From Lytechinus pictus (taxonomy: Eukaryota): a DNA stretch of 64,000 bases. Location: assembly GCF_037042905.1 (NCBI RefSeq), contig NC_087247.1:19344001-19408000 (forward strand), given 5' to 3'. The notes beneath the pieces are model-generated. The model did not search any database. It was not told the DNA's origin and saw nothing but the letters and a program-made list of their open reading frames with translations. The translations under genes and the position numbers were made by a program. Below, piece after piece: positions 1 through 64,000 of this stretch (its first letter is position 1; each line of letters opens with the position of its first letter).

Positions 1-926
1 ACGTTCCATCACTGGCGTGCAGGCGGGGGGGGGGGGGGGGTCTTAGTTCCACACCCAAGAGGAAATAAAATAAATTATAGGAGACAACGTAATGGACTGA
101 ATGGTAAAAATGAAATGTGTTATTTGCTGAATATAATGGAAAAATCTATCACATAATTAGTATTTTAATTTCAATTGGGTTTTTTTTCCAGCTCGCTTTG
201 CTCGCTGATGACTTTTTACAAATTTTCCCGCGTTACTATTATGTGCCCCCTCAAAATATTTGGTTCATTACGCAACTGGGTTGAGTAAATGTGTTGTGTA
301 AAAGCTATATTCTGTATATACCTGCGATTTGATTAAAACTAGCGGCAATCTGCGAGGTTTAAAATGGCTTTGATATCAGGAAGTTCCGGGGGCTCCGCCC
401 CAGACCCCAACCGCATAGCACTGCCATATATGACTTTGGAAGGGTTGGGCCATGGTCCCAAAATTTATATAACCAAGAACCAAAAAAAAGGATGAAAGAA
501 AAGCAAAGGAAAAGTGTAGGATAAGATTTTATTTACTGAATATTCGTCAAAAATATCTCAAAGTAAGATTCTCATGAAAGGGTGATTTATTTTCTTGCTC
601 GCTTCACTCGCTCGGGACTTATATTAAGCAGGTTTTTAGCACATGCGCCATACTGCAGCGTCCCTTGAGAGAGAAGGGTGAAATATATTATTCTCTGGAT
701 ATCATGTCAAAATCTATCACAAAATTGGATTTTTATAATAAAAATGTCAACATTTTTGCTTTTTTTAAGATAAATAAATATTCTGCCCGATAAGAAATAT
801 CTGGCCCTCTCAAAATTGTTGCCTCAAAACACTATTACGCCTGTTCATATGATGATATGACCGGGACATTTTGGGCTCTTGCCCCTCCCCCCCCCCCCCC
901 GGCCACTTACCCCTGTTACGCCCCAG
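1..926. mobile_element. Composite of non-autonomous CAGTGGCG/CAGGGGCG-type (hAT-like) element pieces replacing the 3' end of GPCR copy 1
   Basis: Terminus-like motifs cactggcgtg (10), ttacgcaactg (~268-278) and ttacgccccag (916-926) abutting GPCR sequence. Poly-G/C runs and gctcgcttcgctcg-type motifs are shared with other elements here. The far end and TSD are not in the window. Confidence 0.6.
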
Positions 927-1895
927 GCTAGAGGATGTCTGCACTTCGTGTCCAAAGACAGGATCGTGGCTTGATCGGGAACAGATAAAGATGCATTTGA
1001 GTGCTTTACGAAACCCTGGATTCCTGGCAGTGTAGATAAAAGGATTGACGCACGAGTTGAAGTAAGCCAGGTTTATGAAGGAACGTTGCACTCCTTGCAC
1101 TGGACTCCCAAGGTAATTCCTGGCAGTGCCGAACCCCATTTTTGCGCAGAAGTAGGCAATCTGAGACGGTGCCCAGCAAATGATGAATACAACTATGACA
1201 ATAAGCATCATTTTAAGAACGCGAGTACGAGCTTTCAGATGAATTGATGGCTTACCAGCGGTGACAGATCCTTCTGTTAAGATCTTGGAGAAATGTTGGG
1301 CCTCTCGGTAAAGTTTCTTGGCTATTAGAATTTGGGTGAGAAAGATAAATACAGTAGGCAAACCAATGCGAAGACAGAGGATGTAAGCAGCATAGGCCAT
1401 GTCGCCTTCGACGGAAAATCCTCTGCGAACGCACCGTCCAGTGAGGTCTTTAACATAGAACACAAAGATGCCCCTGCTTCCTGCGAGCATGAACGTCAAC
1501 CAAACAAGAGCTGTACAAATATACGCTCGCCGCTTTGTGACCATGCGATTGAAAATGACAGGATGGACAACCGCGAAGTAGCGGTCGAAACACATGGCGA
1601 CAAGTTTATAAGAAGATACTGTGATTAGCATCCATTGTAACATAGGAGAAGAGATGAAGATACAATAGAGACGTCCCGCAACACTTGAAGGCATTGTTTG
1701 AGCGCTCGGGCGGGGAATCATCTCGATGGATAACAAGAAATCTACAAGAGCTAGATTGCCCACTAGGATGTCAGTGGAGCATCTGGAGGAAGTTTTCCAG
1801 AACACCACAAGGATGACCAGGAAGTTCCCCAGTATCCCAAGAATCGCATAAACCATCTGTAAGATGACACACCAAGGCCATTCCATTGGTTGCAT
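810..1895 (-). CDS. GPCR copy 1: residual 361-aa 7TM ORF of a class A GPCR (galanin/allatostatin-receptor-like lineage-specific expansion); N-terminus lost, C-tail derived from a transposon
   Basis: Motifs GILGN (TM1), NLALVD (TM2), CFDRYFAVVHP, FIICWAP and NSCVNPFIY. Starts at the internal Met of MQP. Homology to the paralogues ends at 927, and the last ~38 aa are read from inserted repeat DNA. Confidence 0.75.
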   Translation of the reverse strand: MQPMEWPWCVILQMVYAILGILGNFLVILVVFWKTSSRCSTDILVGNLALVDFLLSIEMIPRPSAQTMPSSVAGRLYCIFISSPMLQWMLITVSSYKLVAMCFDRYFAVVHPVIFNRMVTKRRAYICTALVWLTFMLAGSRGIFVFYVKDLTGRCVRRGFSVEGDMAYAAYILCLRIGLPTVFIFLTQILIAKKLYREAQHFSKILTEGSVTAGKPSIHLKARTRVLKMMLIVIVVFIICWAPSQIAYFCAKMGFGTARNYLGSPVQGVQRSFINLAYFNSCVNPFIYTARNPGFRKALKCIFICSRSSHDPVFGHEVQTSSSLGRNRGKWPGGGGEGQEPKMSRSYHHMNRRNSVLRQQF

Positions 1896-3057
1896 TTTTT
1901 CGGAGCGGTCTTCCTCGCAAGTAAAATTTAGTATAATGTCGAAGGAGAGATTATATCGTTGCTTAAAACATTTGAACTTGTGGTGGAGCTGGATTCATTT
2001 GGTCTACCCGTTGATTCTTAACCAGTGATATATGCGAATGCACTTGATCCTGGAGAAGCCGATGTTCCTTCGAGACGAAGCGTCGATTGGTTTGTGGCCA
2101 GGGATTCATCTTTAAAGTATACACCCGAAGAATCAAAAGTATTTTATAATGACTTTATGTGGTCATCATTGTAAAGGGGAAGTATTACTAATCAGATATA
2201 TAACTTCACTTTTCAAAATAGTGATCAGAGTTTGCAGAAATCAGCTCCCAAAAATGATTTATTTTCATGCCATATTTCTGCCTTCCACCGGTCCTCTTGC
2301 GAGCTCCAGCTGAGTGACGTCACACAATGAGCAGTGCAGCTGAGCTGACAGCAGCCCATTGGAGACGATCTTTCCAATCAGCGTTTTTTGCTCTTAGAAC
2401 TGTTTATTCCTCTTAAGATTGGTCTTGTTATATAGATAAAAGTTTGAATTTACTGAACAGTGAAAAAAAGTGCACATTTAACGTATTTTGGTAACCGATA
2501 TTTAGCTTAGAATTTTTTTTTTTCAAGAAATATATGTGAATAAACAAAGCATATTTTCACGTAGAAATCACACTTGCGTCACATTAATATTATAATCAAT
2601 ATAAAGCATAGACATTCTTCTTTTTGACTGAACAAAAATTATGAAATTTCATTAAGTAGCAAAGTCAGGAACCACAAAAAAACACGGCAATATCCATCGC
2701 GAAATGACTGAAATTGCAGTTGAATTGCCGAAGCATTATTAGGCAACAGCGGCGAGCGGACTTTATTTCATATATCTTAAAAATACGTTTTCAATAGGGC
2801 AATGGTCTGTGGCCAAATGCGTTGGCCATTGTTTTGTCATGTGCGAGGACCCTGGTTCGAAACTCGAATTTTTTTTCTGGGTATTTTTTTTTATTTATTC
2901 CCCGTCCCTACCCATCTTTTTTTCTCTTTTTATTTTCTTGTGAAATTCTATTCAGACCTGTGTTTATCAAATCTTGCTTCTTAATTGCTGCTTTTGATTT
3001 TCAAGTTCTTGATTAGATTATTTCTACTCTTATTTGGGATGGGCGGGGTAGAGTTAA

Positions 3058-3388
3058 AAGTCAAGTCCACATCAACTAAAAATTATTTGAATAGAGTAAT
3101 TTCCCTTGTTGTTTTCACTCAAAACAGTCATATACACAAAACAATGATATGCAAATTAGATTTGTCACTCACATCACATTCGTTTCTATTTTTTGTGGCA
3201 TTTTGTTTTTTATTCTTTGCAGATTTGACGATAGGAAACTCTTCATCTGATCACAATAGGTTATATTTACGGAACTGTTAAAATGGTAATTATATAAATT
3301 TGAATCAAAGTTTTTATGAAATTTCCTGCAATATCTTGTTATTTTTCTTTAAATTCAAATGAATTTTTGATTGCGTGGACTTCTCCTT
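3058..3388. mobile_element. Degenerate Kolobok-like MITE nested in the 3.6-kb element
   Basis: ttaa-aagtcaagtccac ... gtggacttctccttta. Same family as 22744-23347. Confidence 0.65.
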
Positions 3389-4371
3389 TACTCTTAATGT
3401 AGGGAATGCATAGCAAAATTTATCCAGAAACAAATTGTCTTAGAATATGCAAATCAGTAATTGGACACATGTTCACTTTTCTTTCATCCAGGCCACTTCC
3501 TCACATCCACCAGGCTTTCAGTCTTATAACAAAAATGATGAACCATCACACAACAGCACACAACATTCACAGTGCTTCACAATAAATATTTCTCTCGGTT
3601 CATACATGCAATAAATATTGTGGAAAACAAATAAAAGGCGTACCCATATTCAAATACCGTTTAAAAGGACAAATATATTATACCTTTCGAGAAAAATCAG
3701 CACGTTAAATATCTGATAACAAAACATAATTATGGGGCACTGCAAGAAACTTATGTTCAATTGCAAATCAAGCGTAAGTCTTAAATTCAAATTTAAGCGT
3801 AATAAGGTCGAGTTGCAATCGCAATTCAACTACATGTTTAATCAAAGGACTTACCCTTGATTTGGGACGTGTGATTGAGTATAAAATTTCTCGCAAAATG
3901 CCCTAGTAACATTAAAATTGTTCTTTCGTTTTAAATTGTGTGTTATTATTTTTGACAAGCTGTATTCCTGTCCAAGTCAAATTTCTTAGTTCTCTCCAAA
4001 ACTGTGCTCAAAATTGTTTCCAAGATTGATAAAGAAAATTTTTTTTGGTATCATTATCAGTCCACAACTTGCAAACCGTAGGTCCTGGAAAGAGTGAAGA
4101 AAAAAATGGCTATATCCAAATCATAGTAAAAGGACATGATGGAATCTCCCAGATTGAGGTAGCAAGCAGAGACAAGAAGTCACCAGAGTCAGCAAGTGTG
4201 CAGATCTGTGTGTAGAAGAGAGAAAAAAAGAAATAGTTTAAATAATCAAATCAAAGTATGAATTTAATTATCGTGATGATTGATGACGTGCGGTGGCATG
4301 TAATTCCCGGTCAACAACAAATGATAGTAGGTTTAGACACCTGAAAAGTTCCACTCAGAACACTGGTGCTC

Positions 4372-4520
4372 TACCTCAAGTGATGTTTGTGTAGGCCCCA
4401 CTCCACTTCACTACCGCTACACTACCGTACATGTACGCCACACCTACCCGGGTAGGTGTGTAGCGTAGTGTAGGCTGTAGCAGTAGTGAAGTGGAGACTA
4501 CACGTACATCACTTGAGGTA
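4372..4520. repeat. ~150-bp imperfect palindrome/hairpin
   Basis: Arms tacctcaagtgatgt/acatcacttgaggta and ctccacttcactac/gtagtgaagtggag, centred on cacctacccgggtaggtg. Confidence 0.8.
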
Positions 4521-5819
4521 CGGTGCTCTCTGAGTCTCTGTGTCATTACAAAGATTGCATCTTCATTGTTGAAGGCATTACGCATACATATATGCAGCAA
4601 CACTCTAATCAGAAAGAAACACCAGACTCTCATTTTGGCCCACCCAAGGGTTCATTACATGCCGCCGCGCACAGAAAATTCAAGCCATAGAAGTCGTGTG
4701 TTGTGGACCCAAGAAGTGAGATCCCAGCACGCGCGACCCACTAGTTAGAAATCCACTGCCAAACGCGGTTCGTGGTGGGAGGTTAGTATACTAATACTAA
4801 CCTCGCAATACGTGTGAGTGATTTTGGCCAGGAATCAGGGTAATCACTGCTGAAAATTTGTCTGGCTTCATGACATCGGCATCATGGTGATATAATTCTG
4901 TGTATAATAAAAACTCAAACATTCCTCTGAAACAGCAGATTTTCAGCCATGGCCCATACCAGTGCTCCTAAATAATTTAACCGCCTGCCTGAGTCCTGAC
5001 CAGTTTTAGAAATCTGAAGAAAAAATCTGCTGGAATTGTGCAAAAACATTATTTCTAAAATAAAGACTTTTTAATTTTAATAGTAGTTATGCCAAAATGC
5101 ATGATTCTAAACTTATATCAGATCTGTATCTGTCATCTGACCTGAATGCATCGTCAGAACAAGTACAGTTTCCAAACATGCTTACCTTGACTTTTGACTG
5201 GATCAAACAGCGTAACCTGCAACATGCATCGGGAGCAAGTGAATGGGACCGTGCAGCTTGGAGTTTTTCAATAGTTAGTAGAGCAACACAACGAAGACTG
5301 TCGAATGGACAAAATCGATCTTTCCAGTTCACAATTCAATTAAAAAAAAACAGGCAAAATAACACAGTTCTGGTTCCCTTATAGTCTGAAGTTGTCGAAA
5401 ACAGAATTCGGATATCACAATACATGAAGAAAACGGTAAATTCGAAGAAAAATAGAGACCAGGAAGGTGAATCAGCTATCAGTGTACTGCTGGCTTGCAC
5501 AGAGAGAGAGCTGAGTGAGTCGATCATGTGACGTCATTATTCTCGACTGTTTTTGATCGCGTGATTGTCTGTCTGGGGTCGGCTGGGGGGCTGAGAAGGG
5601 TCTCTAATAATTTCATTTCTTGCATTTCCACGACATCAATAAGACTGTTCAGTGACATATTTGTGTATAAAAAGACAAGACCTTTCCATTCATATATAAT
5701 TTGTCTATAATCATCACTTTCGTGAATTTTCTTTGGATGTATACTTTAACCAGCACCAAGTAGATAATTTTGGAATATAATTTGAAAGTCATCTTCATAT
5801 TATGATAAAATACGTGCTG

Positions 5820-6092
5820 CTGATGAAATAAAAAAAAAAGATAATTAATATTAAAAAGATAATGTTATTTCTTAGCTCGAATGAAAACCTATAAACAAGA
5901 CACTGATTTCCAATCTCGGTGGATCGTTTCTGTTTGTTGTAATTAATTTCATAACACTTCTTTTGATATGTATTTCAAATACAAATTATATTTTCAACAA
6001 GATATGAATGATATTTAAGACTTACCGATTGGCGATTCACTGAAAGTTGTTGAAGAGCTGATAATAGTCTCCCAAGCTTTCACTTTTATATA
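5820..6092 (-). promoter_or_regulatory. Copy 1 predicted TATA (6084-6092), short non-coding exon 1 and 5'UTR intron (5820-6025)
   Basis: On the minus strand: TATATAAAA, TCAGCT Inr-like motif ~32 nt downstream, G|GTAAGT donor, polypyrimidine tract plus CAG acceptor just upstream of the ATG. Confidence 0.6.
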
Positions 6093-6265
6093 GTCTTTGG
6101 CGTTTACCGCTGTGTCATCCATTACGATCAATCCATTAATCTAGGCCCTGGATAGTATAATGTTCCAATAGTGAATTACACCTTTTCTGGTTTTATATTG
6201 ACTGTGCTTACAATTAAATAAAACAAAAATTGCCTCTCTTTTCAATGTACATGTAACTTCCTGAC

Positions 6266-12257: not shown

Positions 12258-12282
12258 CTTCAATTTTGTTAAATACGTCCTC

Positions 12283-12550
12283 CTGATGAAATAAAAAAGA
12301 AAAATAATATTAAAAAGATAATTTTATTTCTTAGCTCGAATGAAAATCTTTATAAACAAGACACCGATATCCAATTTCGGGGATCGTTTCTGTTTGTTGT
12401 AATTAATTTCATAACACTTCTTTTGATTTAATTTTCAAAAACGATTAAATTTTCAATAAGATATAAATGATATTTAAGACTTACCGATTGGCGATTGACT
12501 GATAGTTGTTGAAGAGCTGATGTAGTCTCCTAAGCTTTCACTTTTATATA
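12283..12550 (-). promoter_or_regulatory. Copy 2 predicted TATA (12542-12550), exon 1 and 202-bp 5'UTR intron (12283-12484)
   Basis: Same signals: TATATAAAA, TCAGCT, G|GTAAGTC, tttttatttcatcag|G. Confidence 0.65.
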
Positions 12551-15101: not shown

Positions 15102-15103
15102 TA

Positions 15104-16440: not shown

Positions 16441-16683
16441 TTAAACAAAAAGAAGCACACTGAATTTTCAAGACAACGATGAATGCATGAATATACATCA
16501 TAGTTAGAAACATGCGTAGTAAACATGCATAGTAGATGTTGACATTGCTGGCCGTCCATAGTTGCGATCGATCGGATCAATCGCAACTCTTTGTATAAGA
16601 CGTGGCCCATTCACTGCATATGGAGCGTAGAAGCCAAGATGGTGTGTAGAGCAGAGTTGTACTGTGGAGCAGAGCCCAGTTAA

Positions 16684-51400: not shown

Positions 51401-51983
51401 GTGATCGGCGTATCAATTTGATAAAGATCAGGGCTTTCCCCAAGATTTTTACAAATAAGTCTTAAAAACATCAAGTTGTTTTTACCCATTAAACTATTTG
51501 CAAAATATATGAGATAAATATTTCATCTACATAATTAGTTTTAGCGTTGACAAAACTTTCTCACTCTCTATAACAGTCCTACATTAACCATTACATACAT
51601 GAACAACAAAACAGATGCAGTGCAAAGTTGCACAATCTTGCTTCATTCTAATATCCAAGAGCTATCACAAAGCCATATTACTTAAGGCAAAGGTAAAGTT
51701 TAACCTACAAAAAGGGCTATATTTCCCAATTGATCAATCGTGATCCTCAATCAGTAATTGTTATTAACATTTTGGCATAGTTTTGTAAGCCGTATTATAC
51801 AGGACGCAAAAAATGGAATCATCCTACTAAAGGTGACTAAGACACACGGTGTTTGTAAGTACACTGCCATCTGCAGAAGCAGATACTTGGACAGACGGAA
51901 GTACGCTAGAGGATGTCTCCACTTCGTGTTTAAAGACAGGATCGTGGCTTGATCGGGAACAGATAAAGATGCCTTTGAGTGCT

Positions 51984-53159
51984 TTACGTACGAAACCCTG
52001 GATTCCTGGCAGTGTAGATGAAAGGATTCACGCACGAGTTGAAGTAAGCCAGGTTTTGGAAGGAACGTTGCAGTGGACTCCGATGGTAATTCCTGGTAGT
52101 GCTGAACCCCATACTTACGCAGAAGTAGGCAATCTGAGACGGTGCCCAGCAAATGATGAATACAACTATGACAATAAGCATCATCTTGAGAACGCGAGTA
52201 CGAGCTTTAAGATGATTTGATCGCTTACCAGCTGTGACCGATCCTTCTGTTAGGATCTTGGAGAAATGTTGGGCCTCTCGGTAAAGTTTCTTGGCTATTA
52301 GAATTTGGGTGAGAAGGATAAATACAGTAGGCAAACCAATGCGAAGACAGAGGATGTAAGCAGCATAGGCCATGTCGCCTTCGACGGAAAATCCTCTGCG
52401 AACGCACCGTCCAGTGAGGTCTTTAACATAGAACACAAAGATGCCCCTGCTTCCTGCGAGCATGAACGTCAACCAAACAAGAGCTGTACAAATATACGCT
52501 CGCCGCTTTGTGACCATGCGATTGAAAATGACAGGATGGACAACCGCGAAGTAGCGGTCGAAACATATGGCGACAAGTTGATAAGAAGATACTGTGATTA
52601 GCATCCATTGTAACATAGGAGAAGAGATGAAGATACAATAGAGACGTCCCGCAACACTCGAAGGCATTGTTTGAGCTTTCGGGTGGGGAATCATCACGAT
52701 GGATAACAAGAAATCTGCAAGGGCTAGATTGCCCACCAGGATGTCAGTGGAGCGTCTGGAGGATTTCTTCCAGAACACCACAAGGATGACTAGGAAGTTC
52801 CCCAGTATCCCAAGAATCGCATAAACCATCTGTAAGATGACCCACCAAGGCCATTCCATTGTTGACCAAGACCATTGAAATAAAGTCTTTGGTTGCATTT
52901 CTTCGGAGCGGTCTTCCTCGTAAGTATAATTTAATAAAAAGTCGGAGGAGAGATCATCGTTGCTTAAAACATTTGAAATTGTGGTGAAGATGAATTCGTT
53001 TGGTCGACCCGTTGATTCTTTGCCAGTGCTATGTGCGAATGGACTTGATCCTGGAGAGGCCGATGTTCCTCCGAGACGAAGCGTTGATTTGTTTGTGGCC
53101 AGGGATTCATCTTTAACCAACACCAGGTAGATAATTGTGGAATAGAATTTGAAATTCAT
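51984..53159 (-). CDS. GPCR copy 5, C-terminally truncated (391 aa) by a 4-bp duplication; probable young pseudogene or tailless variant
   Basis: gctttacgTACGaaacc at 51985-51992 vs gctttacgaaacc in copies 1, 3 and 4, giving a stop right after NPGFRT. The ancestral tail and stop (51827) remain out of frame. Confidence 0.85.
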   Translation of the reverse strand: MNFKFYSTIIYLVLVKDESLATNKSTLRLGGTSASPGSSPFAHSTGKESTGRPNEFIFTTISNVLSNDDLSSDFLLNYTYEEDRSEEMQPKTLFQWSWSTMEWPWWVILQMVYAILGILGNFLVILVVFWKKSSRRSTDILVGNLALADFLLSIVMIPHPKAQTMPSSVAGRLYCIFISSPMLQWMLITVSSYQLVAICFDRYFAVVHPVIFNRMVTKRRAYICTALVWLTFMLAGSRGIFVFYVKDLTGRCVRRGFSVEGDMAYAAYILCLRIGLPTVFILLTQILIAKKLYREAQHFSKILTEGSVTAGKRSNHLKARTRVLKMMLIVIVVFIICWAPSQIAYFCVSMGFSTTRNYHRSPLQRSFQNLAYFNSCVNPFIYTARNPGFRT

Positions 53160-53326
53160 CTTCAATCATGGTAAAATACGTCCTCCTGATGAAATAAAAA
53201 AGAAAAATAATATTAAAAAGATAATTTCATTTCTTAGCTCGAATGAAAATCTTTATAAACAAGACACCGATATCCAATTTCGGGGATCGTTTCTGTTTGT
53301 TGTAATTAATTTCATAACACTTCTTT

Positions 53327-55533
53327 CAGGGCCGTAGCCAGAAGCATTTTGTTGGGGGGTGTACCAGCTAAATTTGCCAACTAAATTTGGCGTGACCGCG
53401 CCAACGTGAGCACAGGGGAGTCTGATGGGGGATGTGCCCCCCCCCCCACAATAATCACATGCTAAAAGATTTTGAATTTTTAAAATTGAATTAGTGGCAT
53501 TTGGTGAATACTTTAAGGTAAATTATACAAAGATATTTGCACTTTAAAAATGAACATTTTGGATCAAAATAGAAAGGCTAGTGTGCCGTAGTTGCTAACT
53601 TGCAGTATAATGATATACCCTATGCATTAATAATATCAAAATCAAAGATTTGTTAATTTTTAATTGACCTTAATTCTGTGCAAGATGTCTCAACTAAAAT
53701 TTCAAGAGTGCTACTGCTAACAGTGGCGTACAGTGGGTCACGGCATGGGGGGGGGGCACCAGCAAAAATTTAGAGTCATTAAGTGGGCGCGCGAAGCGCG
53801 CTCAATTGCCAGGTATACTGACCTGATAGAGACATTTTAAGGACTGTGCCATTAAACGGATATGTATCTTAATGATCAAATAATGCGAGCGCGAAGTGCG
53901 AGCTGAAAATGTTCTATATTCAGTCCTAAAAAGGGACATTATAAGCAAGTTTTGTAATCATGATACGTACCTGTCTTACAAAACAAACAATGCGAGCGCG
54001 AAGCGCGAGCTGAAATTTTTTTGTATAACTTAACCCTAAAAAGGGACATTTTCAGGACTTTCTTTTGGAATTCATGAAGTGCGTACGTATCTCATCATAG
54101 TCATTTAATGCAAGCGCCAAGCGCTTGCTGATTTTGTTAGAATTACACTGGCACATGAAGCACTTTTTGTGGTCATTGTAATCATGAACATGATACGTAT
54201 TTCACTAATGAAATATTGCAGGCGAGAAGCGCGAGCCGACAATTTTTGAAATTTAGACCTGAAGAGGGGCATTCTATGGCTTGTTTGTAGGAATTTACTA
54301 TTTCACTAATTAAGTGATGCGAGCGCGAAGCGCGAGCTGAAAATTTGTTATAATTAGATCAGAAAAGGGACATTTTAAGGACTGTCTTTAGGAATTCGTG
54401 CACTGCAAAAACGCTGGTGTTGATTTAACACCAGCCCGGTATCTATATCGGTCCACACCAATGCGAACGTAAGCACAGACTGGAAATGTTTTATTAAGGC
54501 CTTAAAAGGGGGCAATCACTTTAAGTATATAGTCATGAAAAAAACATATGTCACTACATAAAACAATGATAACTTGAAGTGCGAGGAGATAGTTTGGTGC
54601 ATAATCTTTATGGACTTAAAATACAACAGGACTATATATCTCATTAGTCAGACAATGCGAGCACCAGGAATGATGCAACCCCAACCTGCCCCCATCCCCA
54701 CCCTTAGCACCTTCTGACACCATGAATTAAAAAAAAAGTTTAGTAAAAATAACTTAGAACATTTTTGTGTTTTTTGCCAACTGCAAACTTGTAGACAAGT
54801 CTACAAGTTGTAGACTTGTCTTCATGAATTTGCCAACTGCAGAGTTACCAGTTTTTTAAGTCTTGTGCTCTGTTCTTAGATCTGAAACGGGGCAGTACTT
54901 GTACATCACTTTGCTGACTGGTAGAGCGTATAAAGTTCTGCTACTTTAATAGGCCCACTTTATAATTTGCCAACTATACTTTGGCTTTGATTATTCAACT
55001 TAAACCTTGGAAATTCATCCCACCCAATATTTATGTACCTAGTCCTGCATCTAATTTTACAAAACTAATGTGTTTGTTAAATCGTCAATAATTGTGGTAT
55101 AATTTGCAAACTAACAAGCTTGTTCATATTGGGGGAGGACCGGGGGCTTACTTTCTGTGTTATTATAGCTACATCTGTTTTGTACTTATTTTTGCTGACT
55201 AGTAGGGCTCTAAGCCTGGCTACATGGACTTGGATTTGCCAATTGGTTGTCTTTACTCTAAAAGTCGTAACCTTCTTCGANNNNNNNNNNNNNNNNNNNN
55301 NNNNNNNNNNNNNNNNNNNNNNNNNNNNNNNNNNNNNNNNNNNNNNNNNNNNNNNNNNNNNNNNNNNNNNNNNNNNNNNNNNNNNNNNNNNNNNNNNNNN
55401 NNNNNNNNNNNNNNNNNNNNNNNNNNNNNNNNNNNNCAACTGGTACATGATTTTGCCGACTGCCACGAATGTTGGGGGGTGTCACCCCCCCCCCCCCCCA
55501 TACCCCCCCCCCCCCCCTCTAGCTACGGCCCTG
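53327..55533. mobile_element. hAT-like element (single copy) in the copy 5 5'UTR intron
   Basis: Same TSD acttcttt and the same TIRs as 26157-30468. Confidence 0.9.
55281..55436. other. N-run, 156 nt
   Basis: Same flanks as the other two runs. Confidence 0.99.
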
Positions 55534-58500
55534 ACTTCTTTTGATTTAATTTTCAAAAACGATTAAATTTTCAATAAGATATAAATTATATTTAAGACTT
55601 ACCGATTGGCGATTGACTGATAGTTGTTGAAGAGCTGATGTAGTCTCCCAAGCTTTCACTTTTATATAGTCTGTGGTGTTTACCGCTGTGTCATCCATTA
55701 CGATCAATGCATTATTTCTAGGCCCTGGATAGTAATGTTCCAATATTGAATTACACCTTTTCTAGTTTTATATTGACTGTGATTACAATTAAATAAAAAA
55801 TGCATCTCTTTTTAATGTACATGTAACTTCCTGACATGTTAAAAAGATATAAAAAACGGTGAAACCATAACCTACTCTAAACGGAAAGAAAATATAAGTT
55901 ATTTCCAGAATTGAATATCTGTCAAAGAAATCACTCAAATAAAAGTCTTTCGAGATTTCATTAAAGTTTCTTCCAACCTTCACTGTCATATCTGGAATTT
56001 TAATTTCGTGATACACGAGTGACTCTTTTAACAAAATATGCAGGTGGCGTTCATTCATTTTTGTTAAATGTACTCTGAATAGTCGAAAACTTGATACTAA
56101 AGCGGTTAATGTGGATCTTTTCAAGAATTTCTGCTTTCAGACAAGCCGTAAATGCCATTATTGCGGCCATGATAGTGTATTTGAATTAAACGATTTAAAA
56201 GGTACAGAAGTAATGGATTTGAACAACAAATCAAATTCAATAAAATCAGTATGCTAAGGTTTGAAAAAAGAGGCCCTAAGTGCTTTTCAGACATCTCATT
56301 TTGTTTAGCATCCCTTGATATCTTTTTACTAGTGAGCTTCAGCTCTCTTATAACTTCTTTTTTATTATTATTAATAAAAATAATAATGATATATGGAACT
56401 TGTTAGGCGCCATATCCATTTCGTAAGAGGTGCTCAAGGCGCACAAGTGAAGGGGGGCAAACGAAATTACAAGTAACAGAAAATCATCGATAAAATGAGT
56501 TAAAGAGGTCGGTTTTTAGCTTAATCTTAAATGTTTCGACACTCTTGCTATCTTGGATCTCTCGTGGGAGGGAATTCCATAGTGAGGGCCCTGCATGGAT
56601 GAATGCCCCCCCCCCCCCACACACACACACTTTGTTTTACATTTTGGAACTGTAAGAAGACCTGGGCCCTGTCTTACAAAGAGTTACGATTGATCGTTAC
56701 TCTATGGAATTCATCAGTGTCATAATTTTTTTCTACAGGAAATGTGCATAATGTCCTTTGTAAACAAAAATAAGCACACTGAATTTTCAAGACAACGATG
56801 AATGCATGAATATACATCATAGTTAGAAACATGCGTAGTAAACATCCATATAGATGTTGACATTGCTGGCCGTCCATAGTTGCGATCGATCGGATCAATC
56901 GCAACTCTTTGTATAAGACGTGGCCCAGATTCACTGCATACGGAGCGTAGAAGCCTAGATGGTGTGTAGAGCAAAGTTGTACTGTGGAGCAGAGCCCAGT
57001 TAAAAGCCCCCTCGCGCCTGACCGAATGTAGGCGGACGAAGGGTGACGAATGGGAAAAATGCACGAAATGCACGCGAATTCAACGAATTCAAATAAAATT
57101 TCCGTCAAATCATGCGATCAGTAACTATTCTCAAATTTTATCAACGGTAAGCGAATGATAAATATTACATGCGAAGGATATCGATATTTCGGTTCACCTC
57201 TTTGATTAAATTGCAGCCGAAGGCGAGCGAAAGGTTGGTATAACCCAATAAGACGAACGAACAGTGAGCAATGGTTTGATATGGTGTGCGATTAGAAACG
57301 AAGACGAGGGAATAGATCGGACGTTCTTGTACGTTTGTGTCATCGTGTTGCTTCGTTAAGGGTTCTTTCGAGATCGGTCCACTTTGGCAAAAGCGCGATG
57401 AGGGACTATGCGCGACAATAACGCACGAACGATAAACGAACGATTACCGCAGACTAAATAAGAGATGCGAATTCAAACAGATGACCAACGATTTTTCAAT
57501 TCGTCGGAAATTTTTAAACATGTTCGAAATTTCCGCGCGAATTTGAATAATCGCAGCTGTTAGTTCAGAAGGTGTACGAACCCAAACACGAAGGGTAAAT
57601 ATGATTTACTATCACTTACCATTGAAAACGATGAAGAAAAAAATGCCTTTCGCCAGCCATCGCAAGGCATATTTCTGGCAATTCGGTTAGGTGTGAGGGG
57701 GCCTTAAAGGATTTCGAATTTGCCGCGTTCACTCATGGGCAACCAATGTAAAGATTTAAGAAAAGGAGTGATGTGGGTAAATTTGCTACGAAGTGTCACT
57801 ATACGAGCAGCAGAATTCTGTAGTTTTTGCAAACGAGTAATTTGAGACTGGAGTAGATTAAATAAATGGGTTACACTTCGTAATTCCGAAGGTTCTTTAT
57901 TTCGAAGGTTCGTAATTCCGAAACACGCAAATTGCCTATACCTCGATGTTCGTTAATCCGAAAACGTAAAAGGGTTTGTTAATCCGAACATTTGTGGCGT
58001 TATTCCGAAGGTTCGTTATTCCGAAGGTTCGATAATCCGAAAACGAAATAAGGTTCGATGTTCCGAAGGTTCGTTAATCCGAAAACGAAATAAGGTTCGT
58101 TGTTCCGAAGGTTCGTTAATCCGAAAACGAAATAAGGTTCGTTGTTCCAAAGGTTCGTCAGTCCGAAAACGAAATAAGGTTAGTTAATCATTTAGTTTTC
58201 GGACTAACGAACCTTCGGAATTACGAACCTCATTTCTTTTTCGGATTAACGAACCTTCGGAATTACGAACCTCACTTCGTTTTCGGACTAACGAACCTTC
58301 GGAATTAAGAACCTTCGGAAATACGAACCATAACCGAACCTTCGGAATAACGAAGCTTCGGAATTACGAATGTATGCGAAATAAATGTGCATTGCCGAAA
58401 TCAAGACGAGACTAAAATTAATCAATGAATGACCAATTTTCTCTGTTGCGTCAAGAGTCAAATATTTGCGTGCGAACCCTAGGTTGCGTAATTGATACCG

Positions 58501-60825
58501 TACAGATTTACAAGTGTATTGAATACGAGAACCATCGATCTTGTTTGAGTCGAGAAACATACCAAGATTGTTTTAGAAACTTCAATAATGTGGTTGGCAA
58601 TAGAAATGGATGTAATTTGTATTCTAGACAGATGGGTTATTAATGAAATCATATTATACAGTACGTCCCACAAAAAACGAAACCGAGATTTATCGATGAT
58701 TTATCATAATTTAATCACAAATACAATAGACAAATGACCTACCATTGTAAAGCTTACAATCTCCACTTTCATCTAAAATTACTTAGATTATTTCTCCTTC
58801 ACGCATGAGTGAGCAACAAGAATTTGAAGAGGGGATACCAAAAAGTCACTTGGCGGGCTGTATCTGGGATTCAAAAAAAAAACCACATATTTAAAAAGTT
58901 CAATATCTGCTCTCTAATTTGATACCTCAATTACAGAGAATGGTCAAGAAATAACAAAGTTCTGGTTATTTGAAAAAAGGCTTGAATTCCAACAATTTCA
59001 TAAAATGAAGAGGTTTTACAGGCTATCGTCCAGACTTACTCAAGACTCCGTTTTGTTGACGATCGCCATGCATTAAGTCTTTTGTTAACCGTGCGATAGC
59101 TTCGCTGGGAAACCTGTTAAAACACGTTTATTTAATGAAATTATGGAAATACAAGCATCTTTTCGAGGGAACAGAACTTGTTTACTTCTTGACCATTTTC
59201 TGTGATTAAGGTATCAAAATGAAAGAGCAGATATTGAACTTTTTAGGCATGTGATTTTCTTTTTGAAATTCAGATACCCCCCGCCAAATGAGTTTTTGGT
59301 ATCCTTTCTTCAAATTGTTTTTGCTCACTCATGCGAAAATGTGGAATATTCTAAGTAATTTCAGATGAAAGAGGAGATTCTAAACTTTACAATGGTAGGT
59401 CATTTGTCTATTGCATTTATGATTAAGTTATGATAACTCATCGCTAAATCTCGGTTTCGTTTTTTGTGGGACGCACTGTATAACGATAACCCCTTCAAAA
59501 GTTATCCGCGTCCCCTTGTTACTTTCAACGACTATCTTTTTCACGCATGCAATATGACAGTTCTATATCAAATTCAACATCTTTTACAAAGGAAAACCAC
59601 TGTTTTGACGTTTTATTGACGAGAATTACCAATTGAATCTTGGGATACTCATATACCAGTATAACAACCACGAATTACCCTCCGTTTTTAACAATATATT
59701 TCGAGTAAATAATTAAAGTAGCCATTACTCAACTATATACAAATCACGTTGTATCACTTGCCAAGGACTCGAACAGCACTTACACAGAACACTTTCATAT
59801 TGACTGCCCAAAATATTGGAATTCCCTTCCTCTGAATATAAGAGAGAGTTAAAGCTAATGTACATTTAAACTTAAAGTTAAGAAATTGCTTTTTGCCTCC
59901 TACTCCCAACAGCCTCCCTGGAATGTTTGACAATTATACAGATCCCATCTACGACCCTTTCCTCATTTTTTTTTCTCTCTCGCTTTCTTTTCACTATTAT
60001 TTTTTCCCCTTTTTGTCTCCTTTAATTGTCTGTTGTATTTTATCCTTTCTTCAAGGCGCCCCACCCCCATACATCTTTGTACAGTCTTTTTTATCATCCA
60101 TGACCAAGCATTTATCATCCCTGAAATCAAATCTCTGCTTACACTCCATCTCCTATAGTGTTCCTTTAATTGCGTTCTGTTCGAGAAATCAGCGTCATTC
60201 TATCCTCGCTTCTTAGCTGGTCTCTTTTTTTCATAGCTGTTTTTTTTTCTTTTTCATTGTAAGCATACATACAACTATACTCCTAAAAAGGTTTGATTTA
60301 TGTATTTTTTTCTATAGATTATTTGCATTTTTATTACCAATTTGCAAAAAATAGGCTACTTTGGGGGTTATGATTGATTTGTCTCGATTTATGTAATTGA
60401 TTTTTATTTGTGTTCCTCTAATTTGTATGGTGAAAAAATAAATATTACACTATAAAAAATGAAGTGCTAATTTAGCACTTACAGTGCTTGCATATTGACT
60501 GCACTACGAGTGCTGATTTTTTTAGTTCAAATTTAAACTAGAAAATCAGCACTCGTAGTGCAGTCACATACAAGCACTTTAGAGCACTTTTAGAGTGTAT
60601 TTAGCAAACTGTTAAACAAATATATACATGTAGATAAAAGTTTGTAATATATTGTAAACAAAGTTAAAAAATCTAGCAGTGTTCTTACTGTGAATAACGT
60701 TAAGACCTCCTTTAGGCCAAGCTTACCAAAGGAACTAAGGGGGAAAATAATAACAATGCAGTATTCAGTTCAATTCATTTCATTTCATTCACAGTAAATA
60801 AGAAATACACAAATGTAGAAGGGCC

Positions 60826-63800
60826 TGTTACAACCGATAATGTCGCAGATTGCGACATTATGCCAAGAGCGTCCGACGCATAATGTCGCAGTCAACGCAT
60901 AATGTCGTAGTTTTTCTAACGCATAACGTCACATGTCACAACGCATAATCCGGGGGGGGGGTGGGCACTCAGTATATAATGCATAGTGGGTATGTGCCGC
61001 GGAGGGGACCCCCTTTTTAAACTCAAATTTCCGTTCCGAGGCATAGCATTTTTGTCTTATTGAGAAAAAGAACAAAGAAAGCCGCTCTAAAGCATAGCAT
61101 TTTCTTCTTCTCGAGAAAAAAGAAGAAAAAAAATCCGCTCCAGGGCTTCGCATATTTTCCGTTACGCCGTTCTGGTCGCAATTTTGGTGAAAAGCGACCG
61201 CAGCTCGCTGTCTGACCATCGCCTCTGCGCTAGCGCGCCCGGCAGTCGTGCCGCAGCCCAGCTGCATGCACGTTCCATAGGGATGCATACGCACTCGCAC
61301 GCAGGCGACCGTTCCAAGGACCCCCGTTTTCACAAACATTTGTAGTTCCGAAGGCCGATCCGAGGACCCTCCTTTTTACAATAAGCCCGCTCCAAGGCCC
61401 CCGTTTTTTGTCTCGCCCGCGGCACACCCCCACCACTTTTTTGGTCGAGTCCCCCCCCCCCCGGGCGCATAATGTCGCAGCAAATTGTCAACGAATAATG
61501 TCACATGTCGCAACGCATAATGTCACAGTGGTATTTTCTTCAGGACTCGAGCTACAGATAAGATATAAAATATGCTTTCACTAAGTATTTTGAGACACGA
61601 GAAAGAGAATAAGTGATTTGGAAGTCAGGATTACTCTTTGTATGGATATTTATCGGTTTTATTGCCATTTCGTCTACGGTACTGCCTTTTTCCCACTATC
61701 GCATGGTCTGATATCATTTCATATACCATTAGTTAGTCAACTATCACCATAGTCCAATAACCATTTCGTCTAATTACCATCTCGTCTAATAGCCAGTTGG
61801 TCTAATAGCTGTTTTGTTTATTATCCTTTAGTATAATTGTATTTTTTTCAATTGGTCCAATATCCACTTTGTCCAATATCATTACTTCTATTACCTTTTG
61901 GTCTAATAGCCAATTGGTCTAATAACCACTTGGTCTACTCTCATTTCGTCCATGTTCCATTTGGTCTAACTTCAGTTGGTTCACTATCACTTTGTCTAAT
62001 CCCATTTCGGCTAACAATCATTTGGTAGATTTGCCATGGGTCCAACCACCAATAGGTCTAATCACCATCTCGTCTAATCATCATTTCGTCCAATAGGCAT
62101 ATTCATTTCATCTTATAACCATAATGGTCTACTGGCACTAAACCTCTACGGTGACTCTATGTATCATTGCCGATTTGTTGCAGTACTACTCCTGATTTGT
62201 GGTTCAGATCAGCTCGCGAGCGCAAAAAAACCCTTTACCATCCGCCGACAGGGCATAGGCAGGGAAAAGGAAGGGGAACGAAAGAAAAGGGAAAAGAAGG
62301 GGAAAGAGAGGAGGGAAAATGAGGAAAAATAAGAGGAGACAGAAGAGTGAATAAAATAGGGTGAGGTGAAGACTTTGAAAATTAAAAAAAAAAAATTTCA
62401 TGTCTCAAAAGAGGCGCGATAGCTCAGTCGGTAAAGCGGGGGTTTCTGATTCCGGTGACCCGTATTCGATTCCCAATTGGTGCGTTAGTGCCCCTTGGTG
62501 AGGCATAATAGTCATTTTCCTACCAGGTCCCTTGGAGAGGACCTTAAGCCGTCGGTCCCCTGGTTGCTTGCTTACAAGCATTCATGCTTTCTTAGCAACC
62601 AGGTAAAAAAATCACCATGTACTATATAGGCTAAAATTTTCGCTTCGCGCTGGCATCCATATCTACTTCAGAATTTTCATGCATAGTGCTTGAAAAAGTG
62701 CATAAATTTACCCCTTTTCGGACTGGAATATGAAGTATTTTTAGCTCATGCTTCGCTCTCGCTTTATGCTTTTTCAGTTCTGATTTGCTTTGCAAAGGGT
62801 ACATCGATAATTATTACTATTACTGTTTTTACTATTACGAAGTTATATTTATGCATGTGTGTAAAATTAGGTATTGAAACTAAGTTTTGGGGCTGGCCTC
62901 ACATACAAGCATTGCTTATTTTCGGCAGTCCCTCCGTTTCACTCTAATATACAAAAAATAATAATTTAAGGCAGCTTAATGTCATTAATTGTGTTTATCA
63001 AATCTATAGGCCTTATTGTGTTTTATAAGATGTTATGTTATGTTATACCGAGGTTCTACCTGACTGCTAAGAAAGCACGAATACCTGTGAGCAAGCAACC
63101 AGGGGACCAACGGCTTAAGGTCCTCTCCGAGGGACCTGGTAATGAGGATAAATGCCTTACCAAAGGGCACTAGCGCACCACTTGGGAATCGAACCCGGGT
63201 CAGCGGAATCCGAAACCCCTGCTCTACCGACTGAGCTATCGCTTTTTTTTGGTTATATTCTTTATTTTTATGATATGTTTATTATATACAACATTGTGAA
63301 ACGGAAAACAGTAAATAAAATGAAATGATTAAAACATGTATTCAAAATGCCTAAATTCTAGGTCTAAATTAACGCAGCTTATTCTATATATTTATAACGT
63401 GCTTGAATTATCCAGTTTCAGATCAGAATATAAAAAAAAAACTTCTGCTCGCATTATTAACAATAATGTAGGAAGATACCTAGTTACCCATCCATTTTAC
63501 AATTTACAAAACATTAAAAGAGTGTCCAGTTCTTAGATCCAAAATCTATTTTTCGGCTCACGCTGCCGTCAACTGTTTAGTTGTGTAACTCGAGTCCTGA
63601 AGAAAATACCGGTGATTGGACCCATGGCAACGATACCAAATGATTGTTAGCCGAAATGGGTTTAGACAAAGTGATAGCGAACCAACTGAAGTTAGACCAA
63701 ATGGAACATGGACGAAATGAGAGTAGACCAAGTGGTTATTAGACCAATTTGCTATTAGGCCAAAAGGTAATAGACGTAATGATATTGGACAAAGTGGATA

Positions 63801-64000
63801 TTGGACCAATTGAAAAAAAATACAATTAGACTAAATGATAATAAACAAAACGGCTATTAGACCAACTGGCTATTAGACGAGATGGTAATTAGACGAAATG
63901 GTTATTGGACTATGTTGATAGTTGACTAACTAATGGTAGACGAAATTATATCAGACCATGCGATAGTAGGGGAAAAGGCAGTAGACGAAATGGCAATGAA
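60826..64000. mobile_element. Ginger-like element of unit C' (runs off the window end)
   Basis: gggcc-tgttacaaccgataat start. Collinear with 35724 onward. Confidence 0.85.

What the first reader, a model, noticed from the sequence alone, without database searches (positions are those of the whole stretch)
810..64000. Young tandem array of lineage-specific GPCRs in active birth-and-death: best candidate system in the window
Seen: five co-oriented paralogues of roughly 90-98% aa identity, three intact and two damaged by independent lesions, each in a repeated promoter-gene-spacer unit. Known: sea urchins have large lineage-specific expansions of mostly single-coding-exon rhodopsin-type GPCRs that have been proposed to be chemosensory. 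Inference: this is a rapidly turning-over receptor cluster (chemosensory or other ligand recognition) rather than a true galanin/allatostatin receptor orthologue. Collinearity predicts a sixth, copy-4-like gene about 1.2-2.6 kb past the window end.
Basis: partly seen in the sequence, partly recalled or inferred. Interest (0 to 1): 0.7.

Follow-up and report, generated by a model that had tools for sequence, protein, structure and literature searches.

The report
Young sea-urchin orphan GPCR gene array
A Lytechinus pictus chromosome carries seven near-identical, same-strand copies (five in this window) of an urchin-specific orphan rhodopsin-type receptor gene that are being duplicated, patched by gene conversion and knocked out by transposons and a frameshift; this is a clear but ordinary example of the known expansions of such receptors in sea urchins.

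Summary
The window (Lytechinus pictus, C3:19,344,001-19,408,000) has five minus-strand 7tm_1 genes. Copies c2, c3 and c4 are intact. Copy c1 is broken by two transposon insertions, a stop codon and indels. Copy c5 is broken by a 4-bp duplication that removes helix 8 and the C-tail.

The predicted sixth copy exists 1.29-2.62 kb past the window end. It is 99.8% identical to c4 and intact. A seventh copy lies 22 kb further on.

Each unit has a conserved TATA-like motif, a short 5' exon, a ~200-nt intron and one coding exon. All three N runs lie inside one hAT-like element in intron 1 of c3 and c5, not in coding sequence.

This is not a galanin/allatostatin-A receptor orthologue. Similarity to solved receptors is flat across families. 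NCBI names the paralogues after five different peptide receptors. They nest in an echinoid-only clade.

Annotated copy number is 1 in S. purpuratus, 3 in L. variegatus and 7 in L. pictus. At least two types predate the Lytechinus split. Differences concentrate in the extracellular half (omega ~0.9 versus ~0.2), which does not prove positive selection.

The scan flagged similar GPCR arrays elsewhere in this genome.

The parts
1..926 (.). Part of a second insertion (about 1.57 kb) in the C-tail coding region of c1. It runs off the window start.
   Evidence: Homology to the other copies stops after codon ~418 (...TSSS). It resumes at window-equivalent -645 to -1238.
924..2115 (-). c1 pseudogene body (codon 17 to ...TSSS). 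It carries a K47 stop, a 2-bp insertion, a 30-bp deletion and a 9-bp in-frame insertion. A 361-aa ORF with a complete 7TM domain survives at 810-1895.
2116..5743 (-). 3,628-bp non-autonomous TIR transposon in c1 codon 16/17. The target-site duplication is TTAA and the termini are AGTATACAYCC... (piggyBac-like target).
   Evidence: No ORF of 100 aa or more lies inside it.
5744..6093 (-). Displaced 5' end of c1: TATA-like motif (6080-6093), exon 1 donor (exon ends 6026), intron, acceptor (5820-5828), ATG (5790-5792) and the first 16 codons.
10944..12551 (-). c2, intact type-A gene (437 aa). CDS 10944-12257, acceptor ...TTTCATCAG at 12283-12291, intron 12283-12484 (202 nt), GTAAGT donor, 5' exon ending at 12485, TATATAAAAG at 12541-12550.
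   Evidence: Matches P0052.
16442..38557 (.). First copy of the higher-order segmental duplication (spacer, c3, spacer). Its partner is 43546-63652 at 97.6-99.3% identity. The spacers are TE-rich.
   Evidence: The TEs occur elsewhere in the genome at 88-93%, but local copies match at 98-100% over their full length.
24661..30604 (-). c3, intact type-A gene (442 aa). CDS 24661-25989. Intron 1 (26016-30537) is enlarged by the hAT-like insertion. The 5' exon ends at 30538 and the TATA-like motif is at 30591-30604.
   Evidence: Matches P0053.
26157..30468 (.). hAT-like insertion in c3 intron 1 (8-bp target duplication AAAGAAGT, termini CAGGGCCG/CGGCCCTG). It has an internal ~2-kb tandem duplication and holds N runs 28127-28409 and 30172-30383.
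40856..42482 (-). c4, intact type-B gene (443 aa). CDS 40856-42187, intron 42214-42415, 5' exon ending at 42416, TATA-like motif at 42469-42482.
   Evidence: Matches P0056.
43546..63652 (.). Second copy of the higher-order duplication (spacer, c5, spacer). It continues past the window into c6.
51830..55669 (-). c5, type-A gene with a frameshift. ATG at 53157-53159. The ORF stops at 51984 after NPGFR-T. The out-of-frame remainder of the C-tail extends to 51830. Intron 1 (53186-55602) holds the hAT-like insertion. The TATA-like motif is at 55656-55669.
   Evidence: NCBI models it as a 391-aa protein, P0051.
51985..51992 (-). 4-bp tandem duplication CGTA to CGTACGTA. This is the c5 frameshift. 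It removes most of helix 8 (residues 387-398 in the model) and the C-tail.
52659..52770 (-). Gene-conversion tract in c5: nine consecutive type-B (c4/c6) diagnostic sites, CDS positions 390-501, in an otherwise type-A gene. The maximum extent is 52646-52811. It changes residues 130, 132, 148, 159 (2.60) and 161 (2.62).
53327..55533 (.). The same hAT-like insertion in c5 intron 1, with the same target duplication. It holds N run 55281-55436.

Best explanation
What it is. This is a seven-gene tandem array (five genes in the window) of an echinoid-specific orphan class A (rhodopsin-type) GPCR in Lytechinus pictus.

Gene structure. Each unit carries a TATA-like core promoter motif, a very short non-coding 5' exon, a ~200-nt intron and one coding exon. 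The protein has a signal-peptide-like N-terminus, a disordered ~90-aa Ser/Thr-rich ectodomain, seven helices with all class A switches intact, an ECL2 beta-hairpin and helix 8.

History. The subfamily is single-copy in S. purpuratus. It had split into at least two or three types before L. pictus and L. variegatus diverged. In L. pictus it expanded further by unequal crossing-over between the TE-rich, highly similar spacers. This amplified type A (c1, c2, c3/c5) and duplicated a two-gene A+B block of about 25 kb (c3-c4 to c5-c6).

Ongoing processes (shown).
- Short-tract gene conversion moves sequence between types. One case is the 112-166 bp type-B patch in c5. Another is a ~600-nt homogenised stretch running from the promoter into the N-terminal ectodomain.
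- Copies are lost to transposon insertion (c1) and to a frameshift (c5).
- Paralogues differ mainly at extracellular-half and pocket positions: 2.60, 3.32, 4.60, 5.38-5.43, 6.58, 7.35 and 7.39. The intracellular signalling half stays under purifying selection.

Function (inferred). The copies probably bind different ligands and signal through the same G-protein machinery. The ligand is unknown. A chemosensory role, as proposed for sea-urchin surreal-GPCRs, is plausible but untested.
For: Identity and copy number. Pfam 7tm_1 matches are full length. The genome search finds 7 copies on C3, and the next paralogue is only 45% identical. The species is L. pictus by 99-100% matches to its RefSeq proteins.

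Lesions..

Gene structure. The donor GTAAGT, the acceptor and the TATA-like motif are conserved in all 7 L. pictus copies. The same exon, intron and splice signals are conserved in the 3 L. variegatus copies, with small variants in Lv_a (donor GTATGT, motif shorter by one A). An older NCBI model (P0061) uses this splice junction.

Phylogeny. Type B groups with Lv_b and Lv_c at UFboot 96, and c7 groups with Lv_a (weak support). S. purpuratus P0008 is a fragment of P0007, so that species has a single gene.

Divergence. dS is 0.003 for c4-c6, 0.02 for c3-c5, 0.03 for c2-c3, 0.06-0.11 between types, and 0.09-0.11 between L. pictus and L. variegatus orthologues.

Conversion..

Selection.
- Variable TM positions: 24 of 103 in the extracellular half versus 7 of 112 in the intracellular half (Fisher p = 4e-4).
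- Pairwise omega is 0.7-1.3 (extracellular) versus 0.17-0.45 (intracellular) in the comparisons that involve a type-A or type-B copy. The conserved pair c7-Lv_a is lower in both halves, at 0.32 and 0.13.
- Maximum-likelihood omega within Lytechinus is 0.87 (extracellular) versus 0.22 (intracellular).
- Omega against S. purpuratus is 0.26.

Fold. AlphaFold model with TM-core pLDDT mostly 80-93 (about 60-80 across TM6-TM7), seven helices, an ECL2 hairpin and helix 8 at 387-398.

Segmental origin of the spacers..

Family context. At least 95 intronless relatives in this genome, many in local clusters, and an echinoid-only clade. Surreal-GPCR literature: PMC7042368, PMC5442662, PMC10855541.
Against: - There is no expression evidence.
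- An extracellular-half omega near 1 fits relaxed constraint as well as diversifying selection. No site-model test was run.
- The relative-rate excess of types A and B over c7/Lv_a is only marginal (p 0.03-0.3).
- The L. variegatus count rests on annotated proteins and on +/-10 kb of DNA around them. About 49 kb between the L. variegatus copies was not seen.
- The 98-99.6% identical 25-kb blocks could in part be a false duplication made by the assembler.
- The promoter and 5' exon are inferred from conservation and one gene model, not from transcripts.
Confidence: 0.8

Rival explanations
1. Part of the array is an assembly artefact. The second 25-kb block (c5, c6, or c4 plus c5) would be the other haplotype, or a chimeric contig, placed in tandem. 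The true array would have about five genes, and c5 with its frameshift and conversion patch would be an allele of c3.
For: The blocks are 97.6-99.6% identical, which is within the range expected for sea-urchin alleles (my own knowledge). c4 and c6 differ at 2 of 1,326 coding bases. N runs sit at equivalent places in both blocks.
Against: - The spacer element following c2, c4 and c6 occurs three times, each time with a different neighbour. The junction from c4 into a c3-like unit has no counterpart in a five-gene model.
- The N runs have identical flanks inside one transposon, so they look like a masked or unresolved repeat core rather than contig ends.
- No extra copies lie on unplaced scaffolds.
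- An older L. pictus annotation also lists two distinct type-B and two type-A proteins.
Confidence: 0.15
2. The genes are receptors for an endogenous peptide or hormone, not environmental chemoreceptors. The Lytechinus expansion would then follow a co-expanding internal ligand, or simple subfunctionalisation.
For: The subfamily is single-copy and constrained in S. purpuratus (omega 0.26). The c7/Lv_a lineage keeps a constrained pocket (extracellular-half omega 0.32) and the S. purpuratus-like K3.32 plus D4.60 pair. The ECL2 beta-hairpin and Q/H/K at 3.32 resemble peptide receptors rather than amine receptors (the resemblance is from my own knowledge).
Against: There is no orthologue outside echinoids. 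The best non-echinoid identity is 23-29%. The gene lies within a large intronless, tandemly clustered, echinoid-only expansion, which is the pattern described for putative chemoreceptors (PMC7042368). Pocket residues turn over quickly in types A and B.
Confidence: 0.3
3. The type A and B copies are functionally redundant or decaying duplicates. Their pocket differences would be neutral drift under relaxed constraint, not new specificities.
For: Extracellular-half omega is 0.87, not above 1. Two of seven copies are already dead. Both insertions in c1 and the hAT-like element in the introns of c3 and c5 show that insertions are tolerated.
Against: Intracellular-half omega is 0.17-0.45 between types. 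N1.50, D2.50, DRY, CWxP, NPxxY and the TM3-ECL2 cysteines are all intact in c2, c3, c4, c6 and c7. Divergence persists in the TM core while the flanks are homogenised by conversion. That pattern suggests selection against homogenising the pocket.
Confidence: 0.2
4. They are true galanin/allatostatin-A (or QRFP, PrRP or trissin) receptor orthologues, as the database names say.
For: Only the automatic RefSeq names. Galanin receptors are among the top solved-structure hits.
Against: Galanin receptor 1 scores 76 bits. Histamine H4 (77.7), alpha-1B adrenergic (77.6) and PrRP receptor (76.2) score the same. Five different names are given to 88-98% identical paralogues. The clade is echinoid-only.
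Confidence: 0.03

Closest known systems
[quoted passage not shown] 2006, as summarised in PMC7042368, PMC5442662 and PMC10855541)
   Same: Both are echinoid-specific rhodopsin-type receptors with a single coding exon, arranged in tandem clusters. Both have many paralogues (at least 95 relatives in this genome) and no orthologue outside echinoderms.
   Different: Assignment to a surreal group (A-F) could not be tested, because no reference sequences were on hand. This subfamily is single-copy in S. purpuratus and expanded only in Lytechinus. The tube-foot and pedicellaria expression reported for surreal-GPCRs was not tested here.
Tandem arrays of putative olfactory GPCRs in the crown-of-thorns starfish (ApORs; PMC5442662) and in sea cucumbers (PMC7042368)
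   Same: Same-orientation arrays of class A GPCRs. Transmembrane helices are conserved, and the most similar genes are neighbours.
   Different: Those arrays are much older, with lower identity between members. Here the copies are 88-99.8% identical, so individual duplication, conversion and inactivation events can still be read directly.
Vertebrate odorant-receptor and TAAR clusters (birth-and-death multigene families; own knowledge)
   Same: Single-coding-exon class A receptors with a non-coding 5' exon. They evolve by tandem duplication, pseudogenes are frequent, gene conversion occurs, and variability is concentrated at pocket-facing TM3-TM7 positions.
   Different: There is no sequence orthology. 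The ~100-aa disordered N-terminal ectodomain with a signal-peptide-like start is unlike vertebrate odorant receptors. A sensory role is not shown.
Galanin / allatostatin-A receptors (the RefSeq name)
   Same: Class A fold with a peptide-receptor-like ECL2 hairpin. Similarity is about 76 bits.
   Different: It is no closer to these than to amine, PrRP, QRFP or opioid receptors. It is not orthologous.

Membership tests
Class A (rhodopsin-type) GPCR, Pfam PF00001 | Full-length match to the 7tm_1 profile above the gathering score | tested here: met
   All five copies score 126-141 bits against a cutoff of 30.5, covering profile positions 1-260 of 260.
Class A (rhodopsin-type) GPCR, Pfam PF00001 | Seven-helix fold plus helix 8 | tested here: met
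   AlphaFold2 model of c3: helices at 105-130, 137-155, 169-207, 218-241, 259-305, 315-349 and 362-385, with H8 at 387-398. TM-core pLDDT is mostly 80-93, about 60-80 across TM6-TM7.
Class A (rhodopsin-type) GPCR, Pfam PF00001 | Conserved micro-switches: N1.50, D2.50, D/ERY, W4.50, P5.50, CWxP, NPxxY and the TM3-ECL2 cysteine pair | tested here: met
   GN121, D149, DRY201-203, W229, P277, CWAP337-340, NPFIY378-382, C175 and C252 are present in the intact copies. They are invariant or nearly so in the family alignment.
Surreal-GPCRs (echinoid rapidly expanded GPCR lineages) | Echinoderm- or echinoid-restricted clade with many paralogues | tested here: met
   At least 95 relatives in the own genome. 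An echinoid-only clade is separated from non-echinoderm receptors with bootstrap 100. Sampling of outgroups was limited.
Surreal-GPCRs (echinoid rapidly expanded GPCR lineages) | Single coding exon and tandem genomic clustering | tested here: met
   Each CDS is one ORF. The seven copies lie within 90 kb on the same strand.
Surreal-GPCRs (echinoid rapidly expanded GPCR lineages) | Phylogenetic placement within published groups A-F | not testable with these tools
Surreal-GPCRs (echinoid rapidly expanded GPCR lineages) | Expression in tube feet, pedicellariae or other sensory tissue | not tested
No RNA run held the stretch.
Galanin / allatostatin-A receptor | Specific (orthologous) similarity to galanin/AstA receptors above other class A families | tested here: not met
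   GALR1 scores 76 bits, against H4R 77.7, alpha-1B-AR 77.6 and PrRPR 76.2. Paralogues carry five different names. The tree supports this.
Galanin / allatostatin-A receptor | Activation by galanin/AstA-type peptides | not testable with these tools
   This needs a receptor assay.
Birth-and-death multigene family | Lineage-specific gains, pseudogenes in the array, and orthologous types shared between species | tested here: met
   Copy numbers are 1 (S. purpuratus), 3 (L. variegatus) and 7 (L. pictus). c1 and c5 are inactivated. Type B groups with Lv_b and Lv_c at UFboot 96. Gene conversion also acts, so evolution is mixed.

The most novel reading that the evidence does not exclude
Types A and B may be newly specialised receptors. 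Selection would keep their binding-pocket differences in place while gene conversion homogenises the promoter and N-terminus. Short conversion tracts such as the TM1-TM2 patch in c5 would act as cassette exchange that creates new pocket combinations. If so, the array would be a natural set of near-isogenic chimeras. They differ almost only at 2.60, 3.32, 4.60, 5.42 and 7.39, and could be used to deorphanise an echinoderm chemoreceptor family and map its specificity.
Probability: 0.2. Interest if true: 0.5.

Novelty: new member of a known kind. Interest (0 to 1): 0.3.

Why it matters
The phenomenon, lineage-specific tandem expansion of rhodopsin-type GPCRs in sea urchins, has been known since the S. 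purpuratus genome. These genes are already RefSeq models, so this is not a new system.

Its value is practical.
- It shows that the names 'allatostatin-A / galanin / QRFP / trissin / PrRP receptor-like' given to these genes are arbitrary. They should not be read as neuropeptide-receptor orthology, as at least one genome paper does for the urchin 'allatostatin-A receptor-like' name (PMC10855541).
- The array is young enough that each evolutionary step can be read base by base: a two-gene block duplication, conversion tracts, a TTAA-target transposon knockout and a 4-bp frameshift.
- L. pictus is a genetically tractable urchin (my own knowledge). The few pocket differences between otherwise identical paralogues make a convenient starting set for deorphanising an echinoderm orphan receptor family.

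Tried and rejected
The later genome DNA searches used 35486-38557, 19402-22297 and 16442-18754. Only local scripts that compared the whole region with itself included those letters.
- The look-up of sequencing runs: no run held more than 24% of the words of 40600-46600. The DNA runs are small, so they probably hold only the repeats.
- Independent contigs. The look-up of encoding contigs found no independent contig encoding exactly c3, c4/c6 or the truncated c5 protein. The frameshift could therefore not be confirmed independently.
- L041. The Logan contig L041, from a strongylocentrotid relative, is collinear with the S. purpuratus genome through the acceptor site. It is genomic DNA, not a spliced transcript.
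- Synteny. The PARP gene next to the S. purpuratus orthologue was not found within -20 to +104 kb of the L. pictus array.
- Spacer ORFs. Ten ORFs of 111-164 aa gave no Pfam match, so there are no other recognisable genes between the copies.
- c1 as an edge-truncated copy. I first read it that way and rejected this. Both missing ends are present but displaced by insertions.
- c2's early stop as a lesion. Rejected, because two L. variegatus orthologues share it.
- The N runs as contig ends. Rejected as the preferred reading once their flanks proved identical. I did not look up their content.
- Relative-rate tests. Types A and B against c7/Lv_a gave only marginal results.

Full report
**Where and what.** The window is G000:C3:19,344,001-19,408,000 of an 812-Mb assembly. 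The encoded proteins are 99-100% identical to Lytechinus pictus RefSeq models on a contig of the same length, so the species is L. pictus.

Five minus-strand ORFs give full-length Pfam 7tm_1 matches, E 2e-36 to 5e-41:
- c1 810-1895
- c2 10944-12263
- c3 24661-25995
- c4 40856-42193
- c5 51984-53165

Identity to c3 is 97.7% (c2), 89.9% (c4), 98.0% (c5) and 88.4% (c1).

**The whole array.** A six-frame search of the genome finds seven copies, all on this strand of C3. The next paralogue anywhere is only 45% identical. I fetched the flanks.
It differs from c4 at 2 of 1,326 coding bases and is intact.
- c7 lies at 87687-89018 and is open.
- No further copy occurs between -20 kb and +104 kb.

**Lesions.**
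- c5 carries a 4-bp tandem duplication (CGTA to CGTACGTA, 51985-51992). It shifts the frame after NPGFR. In the AlphaFold model helix 8 spans residues 387-398, so c5 loses almost all of helix 8 and the tail.
- c1 is not an edge-truncated copy. Its first 16 codons, acceptor, intron and 5' exon lie at 5744-6093. A 3,628-bp TIR element with a TTAA target duplication (2116-5743) separates them from the rest of the gene.
- c1 also has a K47 stop, a 2-bp insertion, a 30-bp deletion and a 9-bp insertion. A second insertion of about 1.57 kb sits in the C-tail, after which homology resumes before the window start.
- c2's stop, five codons early, is shared with two L. variegatus orthologues and is not a lesion.

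The count of three intact and two independently damaged copies in the window therefore holds.

**Gene structure and the repeat unit.** All seven copies share the following, in order:
- a TATATAAAAG motif;
- about 57 nt downstream, a perfect GTAAGT donor;
- a ~202-nt intron;
- a polypyrimidine tract ending in TTTCATCAG (the acceptor), 25 nt before the ATG.

The three L. variegatus genes conserve the same elements, with small variants in Lv_a (GTATGT donor, motif one A shorter). In S. purpuratus only the acceptor is alignable. An older NCBI model of c7 (P0061) splices an upstream exon onto exactly this acceptor.

The promoter and exon 1 are inferred from conservation and one gene model, not from transcripts.

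The unit common to all types is about 3.3 kb. On top of it, a block of about 25-27 kb (16442-38557) recurs at 43546-63652 at 97.6-99.3% identity, and it continues into c6. The spacers are full of dispersed repeats that occur elsewhere in the genome at 88-93% identity. The local copies, however, are 98-100% identical over their full length, non-repeat parts included. They were therefore copied as part of segmental duplications, not inserted independently.

**The N runs.** All three runs have identical flanks (...CTTCTTCGA | N | CAACTGGTACATGATTTTGCC...). They lie inside one hAT-like element (8-bp target duplication AAAGAAGT, termini CAGGGCCG/CGGCCCTG). That element sits in intron 1 of c3 (26157-30468, with an internal ~2-kb tandem duplication) and of c5 (53327-55533). 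c2, c4, c6 and c7 lack the element.

No coding frame crosses an N run. The nearest ATG is about 2.1 kb away. The true length of intron 1 in c3 and c5 is therefore uncertain. I did not look for the missing letters.

**Not a galanin/allatostatin-A receptor.**
- Against all solved structures, the best hits are flat: H4R 77.7 bits, alpha-1B-AR 77.6, PrRPR 76.2, GALR1 76.0, beta-1-AR 74.9.
- RefSeq calls these 88-98% identical paralogues allatostatin-A-, galanin-2a-, QRFP-, trissin- and PrRP-receptor-like.
- Outside echinoids the best identity is 23-29%.
- I built a maximum-likelihood tree from 21 own-genome paralogues, Diadema and S. purpuratus proteins and the named non-echinoderm hits. All echinoid sequences form one clade, separated with bootstrap 100. 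The array plus its single S. purpuratus orthologue nests within that clade.
- No authentic galanin receptor sequence could be included in the tree, which is a limitation.

The genome holds at least 95 related single-ORF receptors, many in local clusters. This is the pattern described for surreal-GPCRs (PMC7042368, PMC5442662, PMC10855541).

**History.**
- S. purpuratus has one gene: P0008 is a fragment of P0007, with no second copy within +/-10 kb.
- L. variegatus has three consecutive RefSeq models, two of them 7.7 kb apart and one about 70 kb away.
- A nucleotide maximum-likelihood tree gives three clades: A (c1, c2, c3, c5); B (c4, c6 with Lv_b and Lv_c, UFboot 96); and C (c7 with Lv_a, weak support).
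- dS is 0.003 (c4-c6), 0.02 (c3-c5), 0.03 (c2-c3), 0.06-0.11 between types, 0.09-0.11 between L. pictus and L. variegatus orthologues, and about 0.8 to S. purpuratus.

At least two types therefore predate the Lytechinus species split. The amplification of type A and the c3-c4 to c5-c6 block duplication are specific to L. pictus and very recent.

**Gene conversion.**
- c5 is type A except for nine consecutive type-B diagnostic sites at CDS positions 390-501. Of 81 diagnostic sites, only one other is type B. The patch changes residues at the TM1 end, ICL1 and TM2, including 2.60 and 2.62.
- Between c2 and c4, divergence is 0-2.7% from -266 to +330, covering exon 1, the intron and the N-terminal ectodomain. 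It is 5-11% in the TM core and 5-7% further upstream. Synonymous divergence in the N-terminus is also low, at 0.03.
- The near-invariant N-terminus therefore reflects homogenisation, not special constraint.
- c1 is type A in its 5' part. From about CDS position 920 onward it shares the c7-like, probably ancestral, states.

**Selection.**
- I numbered positions from the conserved anchors. The resulting helix boundaries agree with the model.
- 24 of 103 extracellular-half TM positions vary among L. pictus copies, against 7 of 112 intracellular-half positions (p = 4e-4).
- The varying positions include 2.60, 3.32 (Q, H or K), 4.60, 5.38, 5.39, 5.42, 5.43, 6.58, 7.35 and 7.39.
- In comparisons involving a type-A or type-B copy, pairwise omega is 0.7-1.3 in the extracellular half and 0.17-0.45 in the intracellular half. 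The c7-Lv_a pair is lower, at 0.32 and 0.13.
- Maximum-likelihood omega within Lytechinus is 0.87 (extracellular) and 0.22 (intracellular).
- This shows that the signalling half remains constrained, so the copies are or recently were functional. The ligand-facing half evolves almost freely. It does not prove positive selection.
- c7, Lv_a and S. purpuratus share K3.32 plus D4.60. Types A and B have replaced both residues. The c7/Lv_a lineage has a constrained pocket (omega 0.32). The rate asymmetry is only marginal.

**Caveats.**
- The 25-kb duplicate could be a false duplication, which I put at about 15%. Three points argue against it. The c4-to-c3-like junction has no counterpart in a five-gene model. 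No copies lie on unplaced scaffolds. An older L. pictus annotation also has two type-B and two type-A proteins, which differ from the present copies by about 0.5-1.6%.
- The chemosensory role is carried over from the literature.

**Verdict.** This is a real, well-resolved, very young tandem array of a lineage-specific orphan class A GPCR. It evolves by duplication, gene conversion and pseudogenisation. It is a new, already annotated, member of a known kind, with moderate-to-low novelty. The scan has noted comparable GPCR arrays elsewhere in this genome.

Noticed in passing
window 13640-16443: A 2.8-kb palindrome between c2 and the next spacer, formed by two inverted copies at about 89.5% identity (13881-16008 versus 16275-14152). 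Each arm carries a minisatellite that reads as repeated TNTSATR / HVSNTDQ heptads in ORFs 13621-14115 and 16009-16386.
   Followed up: partly
window 28410-28500, 30384-30470, 55437-55530: Immediately to the right of each N run, the hAT-like element has long, length-variable G and C homopolymer tracts (for example GGGGGGGTGTCAC then C8-C15). This region is likely to be hard to sequence, which may explain why the element core is unresolved or masked.
   Followed up: no
L032-L033, window-equivalent 72217-82576: Between c6 and c7, a ~2.9-kb segment is repeated three times in tandem at 99.4-99.7% identity. It also occurs at 19402-22297 and 46566-49456 in the window and is largely a dispersed TE. 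This is another very recent local amplification.
   Followed up: partly
proteins P0001, P0054, P0055, P0058, P0059, P0061 (older L. pictus RefSeq versions): An earlier L. pictus annotation lists cluster proteins that differ by about 0.5-1.6% from the present copies. One is a type-B variant with type-A residues at several sites (P0058). Another is a c1/c7-like fragment with NHFIY in place of NPFIY (P0055). This hints at allelic or copy-content variation between assemblies.
   Followed up: partly
G000 C13:17.757-17.793 Mb, C17:29.32-29.68 Mb, C6:17.404-17.421 Mb, C14:8.378-8.416 Mb, C10:2.704-2.726 Mb: Other tight clusters of related single-ORF class A GPCRs, 30-40% identical to this array. Several hits contain stop codons. 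L012 and L013 (C14:21.26 Mb and 26.92 Mb) are nearly identical although 5.6 Mb apart, and L013 has two stops.
   Followed up: no
PMC10855541 (Paracentrotus lividus genome paper): The paper discusses a sea-urchin 'allatostatin-A receptor-like' gene as if it belonged to the insect AstA / vertebrate galanin receptor system. The present analysis suggests that, for genes like these, the name is an automatic best-hit label.
   Followed up: partly
L040:1-459 (S. purpuratus locus): The single S. purpuratus orthologue lies about 9.5 kb from a PARP-family gene (WGR/PARP_reg/PARP domains). No PARP match was found within -20 to +104 kb of the L. pictus array, so local synteny could not be shown.
   Followed up: partly
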